Virus record (IMG/VR): IMGVR_UViG_3300035661_000001
Location: 372,001 to 436,000 of that record
Strand: one strand, 5' to 3'
Length of the DNA stretch: 64,000 bases
The notes under the pieces are model-generated. The model did no database searches, had not been told where the DNA came from, and saw only the letters and a list, made by a program, of their open reading frames with translations. Shown here piece by piece: positions 35,194-54,993 of the stretch. Made by a program: the position numbers and the translations under genes. Every line of letters begins with the position of its first letter. Position 1 is the first letter of the stretch.

Positions 35194-36282
35194 ATGAATA
35201 TCCCGCAAATAATCGCCTCAAGCGATGATAAACTTTCATCGCTTTTTAATATGATTCCTATTCATATTCATGAAAATAGGGTAAAAGAAATAGATCATCA
35301 GGTCAGTTCCCCGGAACTCTGGAGAAATCCACAAAAAGCCGCCGTTCTTATGAAAGAAAGACAAAAACTTTCAGAACTAATATCTTTCTTATCAACCGCC
35401 AAATCTAAATTGGAATTCTATAAAGAATGTTTATCTTCCATTCCAGATGAATTAATAGGAATAGAAGACCAAATAATGAGTTTATACTCCGCTATCTCCA
35501 ACTTGGAGTTTAAACAAATGTTATCCGATCCACTCGACGATTCTCCAGCAATAATTTCTATCAACGCTGGCGCTGGAGGATTAGAAGCCGCTAATTGGAC
35601 TACCATGCTTTTTAGAATGTATTCCAGATATGCCGCCGCTAATGACTTAAAAATAGAACTCCTTGACATGAAACCCTCAGAAGAACACTCTTCTATCTGT
35701 ACAGACTCCGTCTCTATTCGTATCGAAGGTCCCTATGCTTATGGCTTTCTTAAATCAGAAATAGGCGTTCATCGATTAATTCGTAACTCTCCATTTAACG
35801 CTAATGATGCCAGACATACCTCATTCGCCGCCGTGACTGTTCTCCCAGATATAGAAGATCAAATAGATATTCAAATAAATGAAAAGGATATCGAAATTAC
35901 TACAATGCGATCCTCTGGCGCTGGTGGACAAAATGTTAATAAAGTAGAGTCAGCTGTTAGATTAAAACATATTCCAACCGGTCTAGTTATCAATTCTAGA
36001 TCAGAACGAGACCAACATACCAATAGAAAAATTGCTCTCAAAATTTTAAAAGCTAAACTTTATGAATTAGAAGTGAATAAGAAAAATGCCGAAAAAGAGA
36101 AGTTCTTCAACTCTATGCAGGATAACTCCTTCGGACATCAAATAAGGTCATATATTCTATTCCCATCCCAAATGGTAAAAGATCATCGCTCCGAATATGA
36201 AACTAAATCTGCTACACAAGTTCTAGATGGCGATTTAACTCCATTTATTAACGCTTTTCTACATTCAAATGTTAACCGTTAA
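35194..36282 (+). CDS. prfB: Peptide chain release factor 2
   Basis: GAGG.EA..W..ML.RMY, SPF specificity tripeptide, [26 protein letters not shown]; no internal frameshift. Confidence 0.93.
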
Positions 36283-36838
36283 AGATTTCATTGGATACAA
36301 CAATCCATGCTTCTTCTGCAAAACACCAATAGATCTGAAGATTAGATCTACTAATGCATCAAATGATCGATCTATCTCTATCAAACCGGACCTATCATCG
36401 GAAATATTAGATCTTGCTTTAAAAGTTACCTATGTGGGCACTCTTAATTTAAAAATAAATCACACCCACAACAGATTTAATTCAAATAATTTTAAAGACT
36501 TGACAGCATATTTAAAAGATTATAAGCTCTCTATGAGCCTTCGCTGCAATAAATGTGGCACTACCATAAAAAGCAAAAATTTACAATTTGATCTAGTTAA
36601 CCAAATTATCAAACCACTAGAAATATCTAGCGAAGTTCTCAACGTTATAGGTAAAGGTACTTTTTATTCTTTAGTCTCCAATTTCCAAAAGAATATATCT
36701 ATCCTGTCCGCAACTCCTATGCAACTAGGTAAAAATAATTATACCACTATACTAGATCTCCCACTGCAACCACTATCAAAATTCGATAGTCCAGAACATT
36801 TCATAAAGAAAATGAAAACCCTTCTTCTATTTATATGA
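36269..36838 (+). CDS. CxxC paralog family member 3
   Basis: CFFCKTP; ends KMKTLLLFI. Confidence 0.6.
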
Positions 36839-37176
36839 TATACGAAAATTGCCCAATCTGTTCAAAAACATTATCAAAACAATCAGAAACTTTAAACCCA
36901 GGTTTAATAAGCTGCGAGTCATTCTGCGAAAAAGAAAAAGACCACTCCTTCTTCTCAAGATGGTTTAATGAAGAACCCAATCAAACGCAAATAATTAAAA
37001 TTGCTTTCAAAGGTGACTCCAAAATATTTTTGAAACTCAATTACCAATTACAAAAAAGTTTTATCTGGACAAAACCAAATGACGTACATCCCATTAAAGT
37101 ATCATTGTTTGAACCAGATTTCTCTGATATCCCAAAACTTAAAAAGAAACTCAAAACCCTTCTTCTATTCATATAA
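36835..37176 (+). CDS. CxxC paralog family member 4
   Basis: CPIC; ends PDFSDIPKLKKKLKTLLLFI. Confidence 0.65.
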   Translation: MIYENCPICSKTLSKQSETLNPGLISCESFCEKEKDHSFFSRWFNEEPNQTQIIKIAFKGDSKIFLKLNYQLQKSFIWTKPNDVHPIKVSLFEPDFSDIPKLKKKLKTLLLFI

Positions 37177-37178
37177 AT

Positions 37179-37532
37179 ATGAAAATCCCATCCGATTGCC
37201 CTATCTGTCATCAATTCCTGTTAAATAAATACATACAAGATGCCAACCAAATCGATGTCCTAAAGAAGAAATGCTTCCGCTCTCCCACCCATAATATAGA
37301 ATATACCTCCCTCCCAAATCAGGACGATTCCCTTAAATCTATCACTCTCACCACCTTCAATAAACTAGAAATCTCCCATTTCAAATGGGACTTCCAATTA
37401 AAAGAATTCACAATCCGTTTCCCCAAAGGAAACTTTACCCAAGAGATAAAACATCTCCCATTCTTTATTCCCAATTTATCTAATCTCCCAACCCTAATAT
37501 CAAAAATTAAGAAATACTTAATTTTCTCATGA
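37179..37532 (+). CDS. CxxC paralog family member 5
   Basis: CPIC; ends PNLSNLPTLISKIKKYLIFS. Confidence 0.65.
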   Translation: MKIPSDCPICHQFLLNKYIQDANQIDVLKKKCFRSPTHNIEYTSLPNQDDSLKSITLTTFNKLEISHFKWDFQLKEFTIRFPKGNFTQEIKHLPFFIPNLSNLPTLISKIKKYLIFS

Positions 37533-37545
37533 CATATGATAATGC

Positions 37546-37875
37546 ATGAAGCTACCCAAATTTTGCCCAATCTGTAATAATAGATTAAAAAAAGATGTCA
37601 ACCCACAAATAAACTCTAGCAAAATCTGCTGCGCTAAATCCCCAGGACACTATCTCGGATACCTATTTGACGAAAAATCTCAGCTCACTCACGTCTTCCT
37701 TACCCTAGACAATTACTCAAGCATCGAACTACGAACAATCCATAACGAAACAATCTTCTATTATAACCCCAAATCTAACCTGGATTTTCTCGTCATACCC
37801 AAACTCCTAATTCCCGATTTCCCATCCCTCAGTAAACTAAAACAAAAACTATCCATCCTAAGGGTGTTTATCTAA
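37546..37875 (+). CDS. CxxC paralog family member 6
   Basis: CPIC; ends PDFPSLSKLKQKLSILRVFI. Confidence 0.65.
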   Translation: MKLPKFCPICNNRLKKDVNPQINSSKICCAKSPGHYLGYLFDEKSQLTHVFLTLDNYSSIELRTIHNETIFYYNPKSNLDFLVIPKLLIPDFPSLSKLKQKLSILRVFI

Positions 37876-37898
37876 CCCACCCATCAAGAGGTCTACCC

Positions 37899-38264
37899 TT
37901 GAATTGCCCCTCCCTAAATTGCCCGTTCTGTAACAATCCACTGCAATTTAAACTCGATAATTATAAATTTGTAAGACAAAACTACTCCCAACCATATTCC
38001 TGTACAAAATGTCCAGGAAAACCTACCTTCGCCCTACTCTTCCAACAAGATAAAATCCCCCAAGCTATTGATATCTTCCTGCCCGCCAAATATAAAAAAC
38101 AACGCTATTATATTCACCAAAATTATATAGCCAAATCTACCACCATCTTAAAAAATAACTACCCCAAATCTATCATCATAACCTCTCTCCCTATCCTAGA
38201 TATCTCCCCTAATACATCCCAACATACCCTATATAGAATTCTAAGCAACAAAGCCTTCCTATGA
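37899..38264 (+). CDS. CxxC paralog family member 7
   Basis: CPFC..PL, CTKC; ends RILSNKAFL. Confidence 0.6.
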   Translation: MNCPSLNCPFCNNPLQFKLDNYKFVRQNYSQPYSCTKCPGKPTFALLFQQDKIPQAIDIFLPAKYKKQRYYIHQNYIAKSTTILKNNYPKSIIITSLPILDISPNTSQHTLYRILSNKAFL

Positions 38265-38615
38265 CTCCAAATTGCATTTTTTTTGCTCTTCTATCCTAGA
38301 AATTACCGAATTATCAAAAAACTCTTCCGTTGCACATTGCCCCCAATGTATGAAAATAGAAGAATATTATATTTCTTATTACCTAGAAACTAATAAAAAA
38401 ATTGACACATGCATGGTTTATCACTCAGACAAAAGTATAAAATACTCTGTCGCCCTAGACCTAAAACTATACACTATCATCATCACTACCTGGGAAGCAA
38501 ATGCCCTAGTCGATGCTATCTATTTCCCCTCCCACTATTCAATTCCCTATTCCACCTAATGGAAATCGCCGGACAATTTGCCCAGCGATTCAATAAAATT
38601 AAAGCTTTCCTTTAA
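38261..38615 (+). pseudogene. CxxC paralog family member 8, split by two frameshifts
   Basis: ATG 38261 MTPNCIF, a T8 run, then frame 38272 CSSILE..CPQC, then frame 38409 ending RFNKIKAFL. Confidence 0.5.
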
Positions 38616-42311: not shown

Positions 42312-42359
42312 GGGGAGGGAGAGGATCGCCTCTCCCCTTCTCTTTTGCCGTTCTGTCAT

Positions 42360-42463
42360 GGCACACTGTTTGCAAACTGCGAGAGTTATGCCATTCGCTA
42401 TTCCCGAATCGCGAATCACGGCTAGCCGTTGGCATGGGTTGTGCAATATGCAATGTCGAAGCC
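42360..42463. promoter_or_regulatory. Two head-to-head sigma54 pairs after a terminator hairpin (42310-42346)
   Basis: GGCACACTGTTTGC-AAACT-GCGAGAGTTATGCC (42360-42392); GGCATGGGTTGTGC-AATAT-GCAATGTCGAAGCC (42431-42463). Confidence 0.8.
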
Positions 42464-44081: not shown

Positions 44082-44691
44082 TCCCGCCGGGGAGGGTTCG
44101 CCCTCCCCATTCTCACCCGGACGGATAGGCGAGCGCCTATCCGTCCCCTCCCTGGGATCGATCCCATCGGAGAGGAGAGAGGCGGCTCACAAGCGCTGGC
44201 GGGCGGGCGTGAGTATCTTAACGCGCACGTCTCTCTTCTCTCCGCTGCGACCCATCCTTGGAGCACAGCACCGGCTAACCCATCCTCATTCACACGTGGA
44301 GAAGGTCATGCAACATCTCATCATCGGGTTTCTCATGGGCGGCGCCATCCTGGCGATCGAGCAGGCGGACCGGCAGATCGTCCCGATTCTCACCGGCGTC
44401 CCCATCACTTCCGAGACGCGCTGGATCAGCGCGGACGCCTACAACCGGGCGGGCGAGTTCCTCTCCGAGTGCGAAAGCCGCACCGGCTGCTTCACCTCCT
44501 GATCCCATCCCCAGCTACGTCGAGGTTCCTCATGAATGATCGAATGGGTACGTACGTCACCACGGTCGTGGGCGGACGCCTGTGCATCAACGACGGGGTC
44601 GGCTGGCATCCCATCAGCGCCGCCTGGCTCGCCCAGCACGGCTGCTTGTTCCGCAAGCGGTAACCAATCCCATCCTCTGAGGAGACTCCAC

Positions 44692-45016: not shown

Positions 45017-45250
45017 ATGAACCAGAACAGCAAGACCGCGCCCGTTCGCAACGCCACCCACGACGAGGCTCTTCTCGCCGACGAGGCGAAGTATGCCCCC
45101 GGCGGACGTGTCCCCGCCCATCTCCAGGTCGACGACTACGAACCCGCGGGCTTCACTCGCATCACTCGTGCTCGCCCGAGCAAGCGCGCCCAGAGCGCGG
45201 AGCGCGAGCGGTTCGACACGCGCCGGCAGCCGCGCGAAGGCAAGTACTGA
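45017..45250 (+). CDS. Hypothetical protein
   Basis: GAGG RBS, MNQNSK...; stop followed by TCCCATC. Confidence 0.6.
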   Translation: MNQNSKTAPVRNATHDEALLADEAKYAPGGRVPAHLQVDDYEPAGFTRITRARPSKRAQSAERERFDTRRQPREGKY

Positions 45251-45403
45251 TCCCATCGGGGATGTAGGTCTCGGGTTGGTAAGGCTGGATCATAGGCACT
45301 TCGGTGCCCCCGCACCAATCTTTGCTCTCTCTATAGGAGAGGGGTAAGAAAGGTTTTGAACGGCGGTTGAGTCCAGCGCTCGAAACTGAACGCATGTTTC
45401 TGC

Positions 45404-45481
45404 GGGGTCTTCCCATCGATGGTTAGAGTCCTGCCGTCAAACGTAGGATGGTGCGGGTTCGACTCCCGCAAGACTCCACCA
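45404..45481 (+). tRNA. Atypical/degenerate tRNA-like element (8-bp acceptor stem, G3:U70, encoded CCA)
   Basis: GGGGTCTT/AAGACTCC-A-CCA; T-arm GCGGG-TTCGACT-CCCGC; anticodon arm TCCTGC-CGTCAAAC-GTAGGA; 5' side of the D-stem is CCCATC. Confidence 0.6.
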
Positions 45482-45621
45482 AGAAGATCACGTGAAGTAT
45501 CTTCGTACATCCCATCAACGACGACGCGACCGCGGAGTCAAGGCTCGACACCGCGAACCGGGGATGCGTTGGAACCGTCGCAAGGACAATCCTTCACCAA
45601 AGCCCGCCACGGCTACGCCTG

Positions 45622-46068
45622 ATGTTCAGGAACACACCTAAATCCCATCTCACCAACCTTCGGCACGAGGTCATGATGAATCAGATCAGCGAAAAGGCGA
45701 AAGCGTTCAAGGCGGCAATGGTGGCGAAGCGAGCCAAGGAGAAGCTCCAGACCGCCCATCGAGATGAGCAGCACGCCAAGCGTACCGAGGCGGGTTACGT
45801 CGACACCGCGCAGAGCGAGCGCGCCGACGACTTCGACTGCGCCCGAGCCTGGGACGCCATGGAGGCGTCCGCGGAGAAGACCTCCCATCGACACTCCGCG
45901 AAGCACGAGGCGCAGGTCGCCCGTCTCGCCGCCGCGCAGCAGGCACGGGTCGCCCGCGGGGAAGCGGACCCCGAGCCCATCCCGGTCAACGACCGCAGCC
46001 ACAACGAGCCCTTCCCGGTCGTGGAGTACAGCCCGGTCCGCGTCGCGCCGGATTTCGACGAAGAGTGA
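45622..46068 (+). CDS. Hypothetical helical protein
   Basis: High GC3; start may be 45673 (GAGG RBS). Confidence 0.65.
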   Translation: MFRNTPKSHLTNLRHEVMMNQISEKAKAFKAAMVAKRAKEKLQTAHRDEQHAKRTEAGYVDTAQSERADDFDCARAWDAMEASAEKTSHRHSAKHEAQVARLAAAQQARVARGEADPEPIPVNDRSHNEPFPVVEYSPVRVAPDFDEE

Positions 46069-46123
46069 TCACCTGCCCCGGCGCCGAAAGGTTCCGGGGC
46101 TTCGCTCTTTTCTTTTCTGTCTT

Positions 46124-46197
46124 GGCACGGGCTTTGCAATATACACTTCTCATGCCAACCCAATGGCACATCTTTTGCAATCTGCAATGTCCGGTCC
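46124..46197. promoter_or_regulatory. Two head-to-head sigma54 pairs after a terminator (46075-46120)
   Basis: GGCACGGGCTTTGC-AATAT-ACACTTCTCATGCC (46124-46156); GGCACATCTTTTGC-AATCT-GCAATGTCCGGTCC (46165-46197). Confidence 0.8.
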
Positions 46198-46730: not shown

Positions 46731-47174
46731 ATGCAAGTCATTCTGATGAGTGGTATCCCGGGAAGCGGTAAAGCGACCCTCGCCAAGGAATTGGGTGGTC
46801 CCCTGACCGTTGTCTGTTCTGCCGACGATTACTTCGTCGATCCCATCGAGGGCGCGTACAACTTCGATCCATCCAAGTTGTCGGAAGCGCACGGCGACTG
46901 CATGCGCAAGTTCGTTTCCCATCTGCTCCTCGACGAGGCGGATACCATCATCGTCGACAACACCAATCTGACGGCACTGGAGCTTGCTCCGTACGTCGCC
47001 GTGGCGGCAGCCCATCATGCCAGCGTGGAGATCGTTACCGTTAACTGCAACGTGGATGTTGCGGTGGAACGGAACACCCACAATGTTCCCATCGGTTCCA
47101 TCCGTCGGATGGCAAGGACGCTCCTCGACCGGGCGCTCCCGCCTTACTGGAACGTCATTCAGACGGTGCGCTGA
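46731..47174 (+). CDS. AAA_33 / polynucleotide-kinase-like P-loop protein
   Basis: GIPGSGKAT, SADDYF, IIVDNTN, RNTHNVP. Confidence 0.85.
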   Translation: MQVILMSGIPGSGKATLAKELGGPLTVVCSADDYFVDPIEGAYNFDPSKLSEAHGDCMRKFVSHLLLDEADTIIVDNTNLTALELAPYVAVAAAHHASVEIVTVNCNVDVAVERNTHNVPIGSIRRMARTLLDRALPPYWNVIQTVR

Positions 47175-54355: not shown

Positions 54356-54912
54356 CAGCAAGTGCGTTCCTAGTAAATTCCGGGCACCCATCCTCTAGCA
54401 GTCTGGTCGGTAAGAGCAAGTCGTTGCCTACCGATAACAAGGTGGGCGGCGCATTGGGAAGCAACGAATCCCATCTAAATTGTTAGGGTTGACTGTTCAG
54501 GGTCATACTGTTTAAGGTCTGGAATATCTGAGTCCCGGCACCCTTCGATCGATGTAGTTGCAGTCCCATCCGTTTGGTGGTATCGCATAAACCAGCCAGT
54601 ACGTTTGTCGGTAGTCGAATAAACCGTCATCACGCGCCAATTGAGTTTCGGGGAAGCCGATCCGAATGTAGGTCCCGAGTAAAGGAACACAGCCCATCTA
54701 CGGAAAATTTGGGCTAGCAATCTCAAGCAGCGCGACGCAGCAGAAGGGCGCCGTTTCGTTTTGGTCGGGAGTCTAAGATTGTCCCATCAGAAACGTGGCG
54801 GAACTGGAACTGGCACTCAACGAATGAAAGGTAGGTTCGGCTTATGCCACGAGACTCGCCGTGATAGTCGTTGGTTCGGGGGATACAGGGTGGAGCCCAT
54901 CCCCAATTTGTG

Positions 54913-54993
54913 GGCAGTGTTTCCGGTTGTTGGTATCCGGTGAGGGGTTTGAACCGCCCTTCATAGTGGGTTCGATTCCCATCATTGCCTCCG
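54913..54993 (+). tRNA. Degenerate tRNA-like element
   Basis: Acceptor GGCAGTG/CATTGCC-T-CCG; D-stem CCGG/CCGG; T-arm GTGGG-TTCGATT-CCCAT; irregular anticodon loop TTTGAACCG. Confidence 0.55.

What the first reader, a model, noticed from the sequence alone, without database searches (positions are those of the whole stretch)
45404..45481. tRNA-like gene with 8-bp acceptor stem, Ala identity pair, 8-nt anticodon loop and CCCATC in place of the 5' D-stem
Seen: G3:U70 and A73-CCA (established AlaRS determinants), an 8/5 acceptor/T-stem geometry (as in bacterial tRNA-Sec, but without the long variable arm), and loop CGTCAAAC readable as UCA or CAA. The canonical D-arm TAGCTC..TGGTTAGAG appears as CCCATC-GATGGTTAGAG. 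Inference: either a decaying tRNA overwritten by the lattice, or a non-canonical tRNA mimic (decoy for anticodon nucleases, or a mischarging/suppressor RNA).
Basis: partly seen in the sequence, partly recalled or inferred. Interest (0 to 1): 0.6.

Follow-up and report, generated by a model that had tools for sequence, protein, structure and literature searches.

The report
Degenerate alanine tRNA in giant phage
A 78-base stretch of a 452-kb phage genome is a real but heavily altered copy of an alanine tRNA gene, with its D-arm overwritten by a six-base motif that this phage repeats about every 100 bases; it is probably no longer a working tRNA, and the motif lattice around it is the more remarkable thing.

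Summary
Window 45404-45481 (+) has an 8-bp acceptor stem with G3:U70, A73 and CCA, a perfect 5-bp T-arm, a 5-6-bp anticodon stem with the 8-nt loop CGTCAAAC, and CCCATC where the 5' D-stem should be.

It is tRNA-derived but fails the detectors: ARAGORN finds nothing, Rfam tRNA scores 22.3 bits (cut-off 29), and tRNA-Sec scores 29.2 (cut-off 47).

Its origin is settled. Its acceptor stem (GGGGTCT/AGACTCC, then A73) is that of natural tRNA-Ala: 75 of 76 metagenomic tRNAs with this acceptor that ARAGORN typed are tRNA-Ala, mostly UGC. Compared with them:
- AGCTCA at positions 9-14 became CCCATC.
- One base at positions 25/26 is lost.
- The loop CTTGCAC became CGTCAAAC.
- One extra A opposite U8 creates the "8th pair".

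The tRNA-Sec likeness is therefore an artefact.

The element exists only in one clonal phage lineage. Seven contigs are 99.9-100% identical over the locus, and the five checked carry it unchanged. It is absent from every other lattice-bearing relative found, where a small gene occupies the site.

Best reading: a remodelled alanine tRNA copy that no longer decodes. A retained non-decoding or suppressor role is not excluded, because all 19 remaining helix pairs are intact and two GAUGG segments complement the inserted CCAUC.

The parts
45404..45481 (+). The whole tRNA-Ala-derived element (78 nt, with encoded CCA)
45404..45411 (+). Acceptor 5' strand GGGGTCTT. The first 7 nt match the tRNA-Ala family; T8 is the canonical U8.
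45412..45417 (+). Lattice hexamer CCCATC at tRNA positions 9-14. It replaces AGCTCA (5 of 6 bases changed) and abolishes the D-stem and A14.
45418..45428 (+). D-loop remnant GATGGTTAGAG (G18, G19 and A21 kept). Its GATGG complements the preceding CCATC.
45429..45448 (+). Anticodon arm: stem 45429/30-45434 with 45443-45447/8, and the 8-nt loop CGTCAAAC at 45435-45442. The family has CTTGCAC.
45447..45451 (+). Second GATGG, running from the last anticodon-stem pairs into the variable region; it also complements CCATC.
45453..45469 (+). T-arm: 5-bp stem and the loop TTCGACT
45470..45481 (+). Extra A (45470), acceptor 3' strand AGACTCC, A73 and CCA
45264..45390 (+). Conserved non-coding block just upstream. 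It is 88-94% identical to L135 11537-11663, where it lies upstream of a different gene. It holds a GGCAC-UUCG-GUGCC hairpin and a terminator-like site.
45492..45641 (+). Small basic protein gene gS. Its GTG start is 10 nt after the CCA. Homologues exist in L135 and L138; the C-terminus is frameshifted relative to them.
42359..42374 (+). Nearest upstream sigma-54-type promoter motif. The next on this strand is at 46123-46138, so the element lies inside a unit of about 3.7 kb.

Best explanation
The element is a lineage-specific copy of a tRNA-Ala(UGC)-type gene that has been remodelled until it can no longer act as an ordinary decoding tRNA.

Shown:
- It descends from tRNA-Ala.
- The 5' D-stem strand and A14 were replaced by the hexamer CCCATC.
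- One base was lost at positions 25/26.
- The anticodon loop lost the UGC anticodon and grew to 8 nt, leaving no U33 in the standard position.
- One A was inserted between the T-stem and the acceptor 3' strand.
- The element lies in an intergenic gap of a + strand gene row, between two sigma-54-type promoter motifs. It sits where relatives carry a small gene.

Inferred:
- The phage keeps a CCCATC about every 100 nt on this strand. Selection for that spacing overrode a redundant tRNA copy, since the phage has two other tRNA-Ala(UGC) genes.
- The element is a relic that does not decode.
- Its intact acceptor/T minihelix with encoded CCA probably still makes the co-transcribed RNA a substrate for RNase P, 3' processing and possibly AlaRS. 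That would be a by-product, not a selected function.
For: Origin:
- A metagenome scan for this acceptor plus T-loop gave at least 120 loci and 77 unique sequences. 75 of the 76 that ARAGORN typed are tRNA-Ala (UGC 51, GGC 19, CGC 5).
- A Myxococcota tRNA-Ala(GGC) carries the same acceptor.
- The element is 51/78 identical to the family consensus. It departs at G10, at the anticodon and by the extra A.

Loss of tRNA features:
- ARAGORN finds nothing.
- RF00005 scores 22.3 bits against a cut-off of 29, whereas 40 other tRNAs of this genome pass.

Lattice:
- 183 of the 188 CCCATC in the window are on the + strand, with regular spacing.
- Without the internal site the gap would be 259 nt; only 4 of 118 gaps in the dense zone reach 250.
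- Other tRNAs in lattice zones carry the hexamer only in the T-stem 3' strand or the anticodon-stem/variable region, or have sites 5-18 nt outside their ends.

Not conserved:
- It is present only in near-identical contigs.
- It is absent from G001, L135, L136, L138 and G005-G009.
- L135 and L138 have the gene gD2 at this site.

Signs of local decay:
- The neighbouring gene gS has a GTG start, no GAGG-type ribosome-binding site and a frameshifted C-terminus.
- The genome holds about nine further sub-threshold tRNA-like sequences.

Redundancy: two tRNA-Ala(tgc) genes lie elsewhere in the genome.
Against: - All 19 pairs of the acceptor, anticodon and T helices are intact. The changes cluster in the D-arm, the anticodon loop and one junction. 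Plain neutral decay should also have hit the stems.
- Two GAUGG segments complement the inserted CCAUC (P about 0.003). None of the 77 natural tRNA-Ala has two, and only 2 of 169 lattice sites do. This could be compensation that builds a replacement helix.
- A second odd tRNA-like gene 9.5 kb downstream (window 54912-54990) is conserved in L135 with a compensatory acceptor change. Non-canonical tRNA-like RNAs can therefore be maintained in this region.
- E. coli HisRS, EF-Tu and ribosomes accept a tRNA that lacks the D-arm entirely (PMC11551756).
Confidence: 0.5

Rival explanations
1. A tRNA-like RNA kept for a non-decoding job. The acceptor/T minihelix, with Ala identity and CCA, plus a hairpin would be retained as one of three things: an RNase P/RNase Z cleavage signal that separates the upstream genes from gS-gE; a decoy or sponge for tRNA-targeting host defences; or a substrate for AlaRS or the CCA-adding enzyme.
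For: - All helices are intact while the changes are clustered.
- Two GAUGG segments complement CCAUC.
- An alternative fold using that pairing costs the same energy as the cloverleaf-like fold, and the MFE fold uses it.
- The element is embedded in an operon 10 nt before a start codon, with no sigma-54-type or sigma-70-type promoter motif found for it.
- A polynucleotide-kinase-like P-loop kinase lies 1.25 kb downstream (AAA_33 6e-15, phrog_505 5e-12).
- The conserved tRNA-like neighbour trl2 is a precedent.
Against: - The element is absent from all relatives, including at the syntenic site, so it is not a conserved part of this phage type.
- The kinase domain is common in phages, and no RNA ligase was sought or found nearby.
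- The GAUGG statistic is post hoc.
- There is no expression evidence.
Confidence: 0.3
2. A working non-canonical decoder. It would be Ala-charged through G3:U70 and would read UGA (anticodon UCA) or the quadruplet UUGA (anticodon UCAA, causing a +1 frameshift), using tRNA-Ala as a scaffold because AlaRS ignores the anticodon.
For: - ARAGORN at a relaxed threshold calls a 4-base anticodon tcaa.
- The loop segment GUCAAA differs by one base from the UUCAAA of tRNAs with a UCA anticodon (own knowledge).
- The phage clade carries other odd-loop tRNAs, for example a CUA tRNA with a 6-nt loop at genome 60357-60425.
- The bacterial translation machinery can use a tRNA without a D-arm (PMC11551756).
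Against: - There is no U33 in register for UCA.
- The D-stem, the U8-A14 contact and position 26 are lost.
- An 8-bp acceptor stem is reported to be what keeps E. coli tRNA-Sec from EF-Tu (Baron and Bock 1991, known here only from its title in the reference list seen).
- The phage encodes an RF2-type factor with the SPF motif, which ends translation at UGA.
- The in-frame-stop survey shows no TGA recoding (TAA 25, TGA 23, TAG 6 same-frame joins, as expected for adjacent genes).
- Gene calls under the standard code are tightly packed in this region.
- The element is not conserved in relatives.
Confidence: 0.1
3. A tRNA-Sec (selC-like) or allo-tRNA gene.
For: - Formal 8/5 geometry.
- The best Rfam hit is the tRNA-Sec model.
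- UCA is present in the loop.
Against: - 29.2 bits against a cut-off of 47. Ordinary tRNAs of this genome score as high or higher on the same model.
- There is no long variable arm and no 6-bp D-stem with a 4-nt loop (features listed in PMC7609411).
- The discriminator is A73, not G73 (own knowledge).
- The acceptor is that of tRNA-Ala.
- The 8th pair comes from a single inserted A.
Confidence: 0.01
4. A phage attachment site (a 3' tRNA fragment kept for integration), or a tmRNA-like domain.
For: - A Chitinophaga genome holds an isolated 3' fragment with nearly the same T-arm, acceptor strand and CCA, with no tRNA body. This shows that such ends do serve as repeats.
- The G3:U70/A73/CCA end resembles a tmRNA tRNA-like domain.
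Against: - The complete 5' acceptor strand is present, so this is a whole gene and not a 3' fragment.
- The extra A would damage a host tRNA on integration.
- ARAGORN finds no tmRNA, and the permuted tmRNA model gives 12.3 bits.
- No tag reading frame or pseudoknots fit in 78 nt.
Confidence: 0.02

Closest known systems
Bacterial tRNA-Ala(UGC) genes with the acceptor GGGGTCT/AGACTCC
   Same: Identical 7-bp acceptor with G3:U70, A73 and CCA. U8, G18G19, the anticodon-stem 5' strand CCTGC and a T-arm of the same type are also shared.
   Different: Positions 9-14 are replaced by CCCATC. One base is lost at 25/26. The loop is 8 nt and has no NGC anticodon. There is an extra A after the T-stem. The element is below every tRNA detection threshold.
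tRNA pseudogenes and degenerate tRNA copies in large phage genomes
   Same: A redundant extra copy in a genome with about 41 tRNAs and several other sub-threshold tRNA-like sequences. It is not conserved in relatives.
   Different: The damage is clustered, and one lesion is a genome-wide strand-specific motif rather than random drift. All other helices are intact.
tRNAs without a D-arm (mitochondrial tRNA-Ser(AGY); synthetic mini HisT, PMC11551756)
   Same: No D-stem. The acceptor, T-arm and anticodon arm are retained.
   Different: Those tRNAs lack the D-arm nucleotides altogether and have 7-nt anticodon loops. Here 17 unpaired nucleotides remain and the loop is 8 nt. [quoted passage not shown]
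Bacterial tRNA-Sec (8/5)
   Same: 13 stacked pairs in the acceptor/T helix if U8 pairs with the extra A. UCA is present in the loop.
   Different: No long variable arm, no 6-bp D-stem, A73, and a tRNA-Ala acceptor. The model score is below threshold.
+1 frameshift suppressor tRNAs with 8-nt anticodon loops (sufD type; own knowledge)
   Same: The anticodon loop is enlarged by one nucleotide.
   Different: Those tRNAs keep a normal cloverleaf and U33. Decoding activity was not tested here.

Membership tests
Canonical tRNA (Rfam RF00005 / ARAGORN) | Score at or above the family cut-off (29 bits) or an ARAGORN call at default settings | tested here: not met
   22.3 bits. ARAGORN finds no gene and calls it only at -ps80.
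Canonical tRNA (Rfam RF00005 / ARAGORN) | D-stem of 3-4 pairs, with U8 and A14 | tested here: not met
   Positions 10-13 (CCAT) pair with 22-25 (GAGT) at one or two positions at most. A14 is C.
Canonical tRNA (Rfam RF00005 / ARAGORN) | 7-nt anticodon loop with U33 | tested here: not met
   The loop is CGTCAAAC, 8 nt.
Canonical tRNA (Rfam RF00005 / ARAGORN) | Acceptor stem, 5-bp T-stem with a TTCRANY loop, and G18G19 | tested here: met
tRNA-Ala | G3:U70, A73, and G1-C72, G2-C71, G4-C69 (AlaRS identity set; own knowledge, Hou and Schimmel 1988 as cited in PMC7609411) | tested here: met
   Of the natural tRNAs with this acceptor that ARAGORN typed, 75 of 76 are tRNA-Ala.
tRNA-Ala | NGC anticodon | tested here: not met
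   There is no GC in the loop.
tRNA-Ala | Actual charging by AlaRS | not testable with these tools
   Needs in vitro alanylation.
tRNA-Sec (RF01852) | Score at or above 47 bits | tested here: not met
   29.2 bits. Several ordinary tRNAs of the genome score 28-39 on the same model.
tRNA-Sec (RF01852) | Long variable arm, and a 6-bp D-stem with a 4-nt loop | tested here: not met
   The variable region is 4-5 nt. The D-stem pairs in the model alignment are flagged as non-standard. Features as listed in PMC7609411.
tRNA-Sec (RF01852) | 8-bp acceptor plus 5-bp T-stem | tested here: met
   Formally met, but it is explained by one inserted A relative to tRNA-Ala.
tmRNA (one-piece or permuted) | Detection by ARAGORN or Rfam; a tag reading frame and pseudoknots | tested here: not met
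   ARAGORN finds none. tmRNA_permuted scores 12.3 bits against a cut-off of 47.
Conserved functional RNA (any kind) | Presence and covariation in related genomes | tested here: inconclusive
   Only copies unchanged in contigs 99.9-100% identical over the locus exist. No homologue was found in 9 other lattice-bearing records or fragments. Absence argues against a conserved role but gives no stem test.
Expressed RNA | Reads with defined 5' and 3' ends | not testable with these tools

The most novel reading that the evidence does not exclude
The element is a functional tRNA-like RNA without a D-stem, and Ala-accepting. Its core would be re-built by pairing the lattice hexamer (CCAUC) with a GAUGG in the variable region. 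It would act either as a quadruplet (UUGA) or opal decoder, or as a decoy or processing module in the phage's earliest transcripts. I found no earlier report of a natural bacterial-type tRNA working without a D-stem, nor of a genome-wide DNA motif doubling as an RNA structural strand.
Probability: 0.12. Interest if true: 0.75.

Novelty: new member of a known kind. Interest (0 to 1): 0.4.

Why it matters
On its own, the element is one more aberrant tRNA copy in a tRNA-rich giant phage.

Its value is as a marker. It shows that selection for the CCCATC lattice is strong enough to overwrite five of six bases in the D-arm of a tRNA gene, while elsewhere the same motif is fitted into tRNAs at positions the fold tolerates. 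That helps calibrate how strong the unexplained lattice is, and that it is read at the DNA level. The lattice, together with the GC gradient and the sigma-54 promoters confined to it, is the feature of this genome that deserves follow-up.

If the element proved to be processed and alanylated, it would also be a natural test case for translation or tRNA mimicry without a D-stem.

Tried and rejected
- **Close homologues.** Exact 26-mer in IMG/VR: only a near-identical 349-kb contig. Neighbour protein in IMG/VR: the same contig only. INPHARED phages by blastn: only generic T-arm matches. The genome's own 41 tRNAs: no close paralogue; the best is tRNA-Ile(tat).
- **Population variation.** Seven contigs carry the neighbour gene. 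Over the locus they are 99.9-100% identical, and the element is unchanged in the five loci checked.
- **Covariance model.** A model of the element (R1) was searched in G001-G003, L135, L136, L138 and G005-G009. It found only ordinary tRNAs at 20 bits or less. It also gave an 18-bit hit to a conserved hairpin region after the 436-aa gene of L135. I rejected that hit as a homologue because its 'acceptor' pairing is not kept in the other three genomes.
- **Downstream gene gE.** No relatives besides itself.
- **Promoters.** The simple sigma-70 scan found none near the element.
- **Genetic code.** ORF coverage under recoded stops was uninformative because of GC content. The in-frame-stop survey gave no sign of recoding.
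- **More lattice-bearing phages.** They yielded G001 and three fragments.
- **Literature.** A search for the motif found nothing relevant.

Full report
**Where the window lies.** The window is bases 372001-436000 of a 451,956-bp IMG/VR virus record. ARAGORN finds 41 tRNA genes in this giant phage, among them two tRNA-Ala(tgc) and a CUA suppressor. The phage also encodes a ribonucleotide reductase and a release factor. The factor carries the SPF motif, so it is RF2-type. The first 39 kb of the window are about 32% G+C. From about 39.6 kb the G+C content rises to about 60%.

**The observation.** The sequence at 45404-45481 is as described.
- GGGGTCTT pairs with AAGACTCC in 8 pairs, the third being G.T. 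A and CCA follow.
- GCGGG/CCCGC closes the T-loop TTCGACT.
- CCTGC/GTAGG closes the 8-nt loop CGTCAAAC.
- CCCATC sits at tRNA positions 9-14, followed by a D-loop remnant that keeps G18, G19 and A21.

ARAGORN at default settings finds no tRNA in the window, and no Rfam family reaches its gathering score. With E-value reporting the best model is tRNA-Sec at 29.2 bits (cut-off 47). The general tRNA model gives 22.3 bits (cut-off 29). ARAGORN relaxed to 80% calls exactly these coordinates as a tRNA with a four-base anticodon tcaa. The element is therefore tRNA-derived beyond reasonable doubt, but sub-threshold.

**Origin.** A metagenome scan required the 7-nt acceptor 5' strand, the T-loop core, and the acceptor 3' strand plus A73. 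It returned at least 120 loci and 77 distinct sequences. ARAGORN typed 76 of them, and 75 are tRNA-Ala: UGC 51, GGC 19, CGC 5. A scan of reference genomes found the same acceptor in a Myxococcota tRNA-Ala(GGC). Set against the nearest natural members, the element shows these changes:
- AGCTCA became CCCATC at positions 9-14; five of six bases changed.
- T16 became A.
- One base is missing at positions 25/26.
- The loop changed from CTTGCAC to CGTCAAAC: three substitutions and one insertion.
- One anticodon-stem pair went from G-C to G.T.
- The variable region is altered.
- One extra A lies between the T-stem and the acceptor 3' strand.

That extra A faces the normal U8, and this is the whole basis of the '8-bp acceptor'. 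The tRNA-Sec resemblance is thus an artefact. The long variable arm and the 6-bp D-stem that define tRNA-Sec (PMC7609411) are absent, and ordinary tRNAs of this genome score equally well on that model.

**The lattice.** CCCATC occurs 188 times in the window against 31 expected, 183 times on the + strand. There are none on either strand in the first 34 kb. In the dense zone the median gap is 107 nt and the CV is 0.39, so the spacing is far more regular than random. The motif falls in all three codon phases and has no flanking consensus except a non-C base before it.

Across the whole genome both G+C content and motif density form a gradient. Both rise abruptly at about 411.5 kb to 60% G+C and 40 sites per 5 kb. 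Both then decline through the record's end and start, reaching 30% G+C and zero sites at 240-405 kb. Only 7 copies lie on the other strand. The same architecture is present in a 433-kb relative (G001), in three contigs that carry a homologue of the neighbouring 443-aa gene (L135, L136, L138), and in three more fragments.

Where the hexamer falls inside other tRNAs of these phages, it sits in one of two places. One is the 3' strand of the T-stem, as in tRNA-Met at genome 118274, the sub-threshold tRNA at 446436, the second tRNA-like gene at window 54912, and its L135 counterpart. The other is the anticodon-stem/variable region, as in a G001 tRNA-Arg. Otherwise sites lie 5-18 nt outside the tRNA ends. 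The element studied here is the only case with the site in the D-stem. Without that site the local gap would be 259 nt, and only 4 of 118 gaps in the dense zone are that long.

**Context.** The element lies in the gap between gene gD (45017-45250) and a small basic-protein gene gS (45492-45641). The GTG start of gS is 10 nt after the CCA. Upstream of the element is a 127-nt non-coding block that is 88-94% identical to a block in L135. There the block lies elsewhere, between the 436-aa gene and gene gA.

In L135 and L138 the position of block plus element is taken by a small gene, gD2. So block plus element is an insertion or replacement specific to this lineage. gS itself looks impaired: it has a GTG start, no GAGG-type ribosome-binding site, and a C-terminus frameshifted relative to its homologues.

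Sigma-54-type promoter motifs (TGGCAY-N5-TTGCW) occur 11 times in the window against 0.15 expected, and 12 times in the whole genome, all inside the dense lattice zone. The element lies between those at 42359 and 46123, so it has no promoter of this type of its own. A polynucleotide-kinase-like P-loop kinase lies 1.25 kb downstream. This fits an RNA-repair setting but is weak evidence.

**Conservation.** The element is unchanged in all five fetched loci of this phage that cover it. These come from near-identical assemblies of different samples, 99.9-100% identical over the locus. Neither BLAST nor a covariance model built from it finds a homologue in any other lattice-bearing record or fragment, or elsewhere in its own genome. 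The flanking gene gE has no relatives in the protein collection.

**Weighing the readings.**

For a relic:
- The element fails every detector.
- It has lost the D-stem, A14, position 26, U33 in register and the alanine anticodon.
- It is redundant with two tRNA-Ala genes.
- It is lineage-specific and sits in a locally rearranged, partly decayed stretch.
- Its genome has about nine other sub-threshold tRNA-like sequences.

Against a plain relic:
- All 19 pairs of the three remaining helices are intact, while the changes are concentrated in two functional sites and one junction.
- The RNA holds two GAUGG pentamers complementary to the inserted CCAUC. The probability is about 0.003 by shuffling, none of 77 natural tRNA-Ala has two, and only 2 of 169 lattice sites do.
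- A fold that pairs 10-14 with 44-48 is as stable as the cloverleaf-like fold, and the minimum-energy fold uses that pairing.
- The second tRNA-like gene (window 54912-54990) is 94% identical over 52 nt to a gene in L135 that ARAGORN calls tRNA-Ser(tga). That gene has a short variable arm. Between the two genomes one acceptor pair changed compensatorily (C-G to T-A), and the hexamer is kept in the T-stem. Odd tRNA-like RNAs are therefore maintained in this region.
- E. coli's translation machinery can use a tRNA without a D-arm, although PNPase removes it (PMC11551756).

For decoding specifically, the evidence is negative:
- The phage encodes an RF2-type factor.
- Genes in this region are tightly packed under the standard code.
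- In-frame joins of long frames across TGA are no more common than expected for neighbouring genes.

**Verdict.**
- The element descends from tRNA-Ala, with about 0.95 confidence.
- The most likely reading, at about 0.5, is a remodelled non-decoding copy whose D-arm was sacrificed to the lattice. Its intact minihelix may still be processed as a by-product.
- A selected non-decoding role is the main rival, at about 0.3.
- A suppressor or quadruplet decoder is a minor rival, at about 0.1.

The element is a new member of a known kind. The surrounding lattice, G+C gradient and sigma-54 zone are the unusual features and should be pursued as a finding in their own right.

Noticed in passing
window 34378-64000; whole genome G000; G001 (L130-L134); L135; L136; L138; L285; L297; L326: A strand-specific CCCATC lattice, spaced about 100 nt (CV 0.39), is coupled to a G+C gradient. 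Both rise abruptly at genome position about 411.5 kb (window about 39.6 kb) to 60% G+C and 40 sites per 5 kb. They decay over about 240 kb to 30% G+C and zero sites. Only 7 copies lie on the other strand in 452 kb. The onset is syntenic (after RF2 and a trypsin-like gene) in L135, and the same architecture occurs in a 433-kb relative. The motif falls in all three codon phases, so it is read at the DNA level or along the whole transcript. The orientation fits a Chi-like or anti-nuclease signal for an enzyme entering at the sharp boundary, but this is only an idea.
   Followed up: partly
window 40720, 40777, 42359, 46123, 46164, 49632, 54322, 60769 (+); 41150, 41614, 48648 (-): The sigma-54-type promoter consensus TGGCAY-N5-TTGCW occurs 11 times in the window against 0.15 expected. 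It occurs 12 times in the whole genome, all within genome 412.7-445.4 kb, the dense lattice zone. L135 and L136 have the same motif. This suggests that the high-GC region is transcribed by host RNA polymerase with sigma-54.
   Followed up: partly
window 54912-54990 (+); L135 18185-18263: A second non-canonical tRNA-like gene (tRNA-Sec model 30 bits; ARAGORN calls it only at a relaxed threshold). Its L135 counterpart is called tRNA-Ser(tga) but has a short variable arm and ends CCC rather than CCA. One acceptor pair changed compensatorily between the two genomes (C-G to T-A). CCCATC lies in the T-stem 3' strand in both.
   Followed up: partly
window 35194-36282 (+); genome 80119-80195 and 60357-60425: The phage encodes an RF2-type release factor (SPF motif, no frameshift site) and two tRNAs with a CUA anticodon, one with a 6-nt anticodon loop. 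A survey of in-frame stops gave no sign of genome-wide TAG or TGA recoding.
   Followed up: partly
window 44086-44260 and 45264-45390; L135 11321-11663; L136 4338-4435; L138 4646-4886: Two conserved structured non-coding elements follow the 443-aa gene. The first is a terminator hairpin plus a long GGAGAGGAGAGAGG / CTCTCTTCTCTCC stem around a loop of about 45 nt. The second is a block of about 127 nt with a UUCG hairpin. The block lies at different positions in this genome and in L135. Neither was searched against Rfam at relaxed thresholds.
   Followed up: partly
window 36800-38600 (+): This stretch is strongly G-depleted (GC skew down to -0.5). It appears to hold about five tandem paralogous small ORFs, each starting with a CPxC-type zinc-ribbon motif and spaced about 360 nt apart.
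   Followed up: no
window 46731-47174 (+): A 147-aa P-loop kinase related to polynucleotide kinase (Pfam AAA_33 6e-15; phrog_2071 3.5e-26; phrog_505 'polynucleotide kinase' 5e-12), 1.25 kb downstream of the element.
   Followed up: partly
window 45492-45641 (+); L135 12809-12946; L138 5536-5673: A conserved arginine- and histidine-rich protein of 45-49 aa (MKYxRTSHQRxRD...WNRxKD). In this genome it starts with GTG, and its last residues are frameshifted by a one-base deletion relative to its relatives.
   Followed up: partly
genome 1-243 and 451744-451956 (outside the window): The 127-bp 'direct terminal repeat' of the record is one unit of a tandem array of identical tRNA-Arg(tct) genes with a 127-bp period. 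It may therefore be an assembly overlap rather than a true terminal repeat.
   Followed up: partly
genome 39033-39133, 43211-43302, 449670-449778, 39558-39659, 448714-448810, 40733-40828 (outside the window): Several tRNA-model hits of 92-109 nt carry 20-35 extra bases in or near the anticodon region. They could be intron-bearing or degenerate tRNAs.
   Followed up: no
L131 3870-3950 (G001): A T-arm plus 3' acceptor fragment is followed at once by a tRNA 5' half with a 6-nt loop TTTTAA. It could be a permuted, split or rearranged tRNA in the relative's lattice zone. Rfam reports a weak YrlA-like hit of 28 bits there.
   Followed up: no
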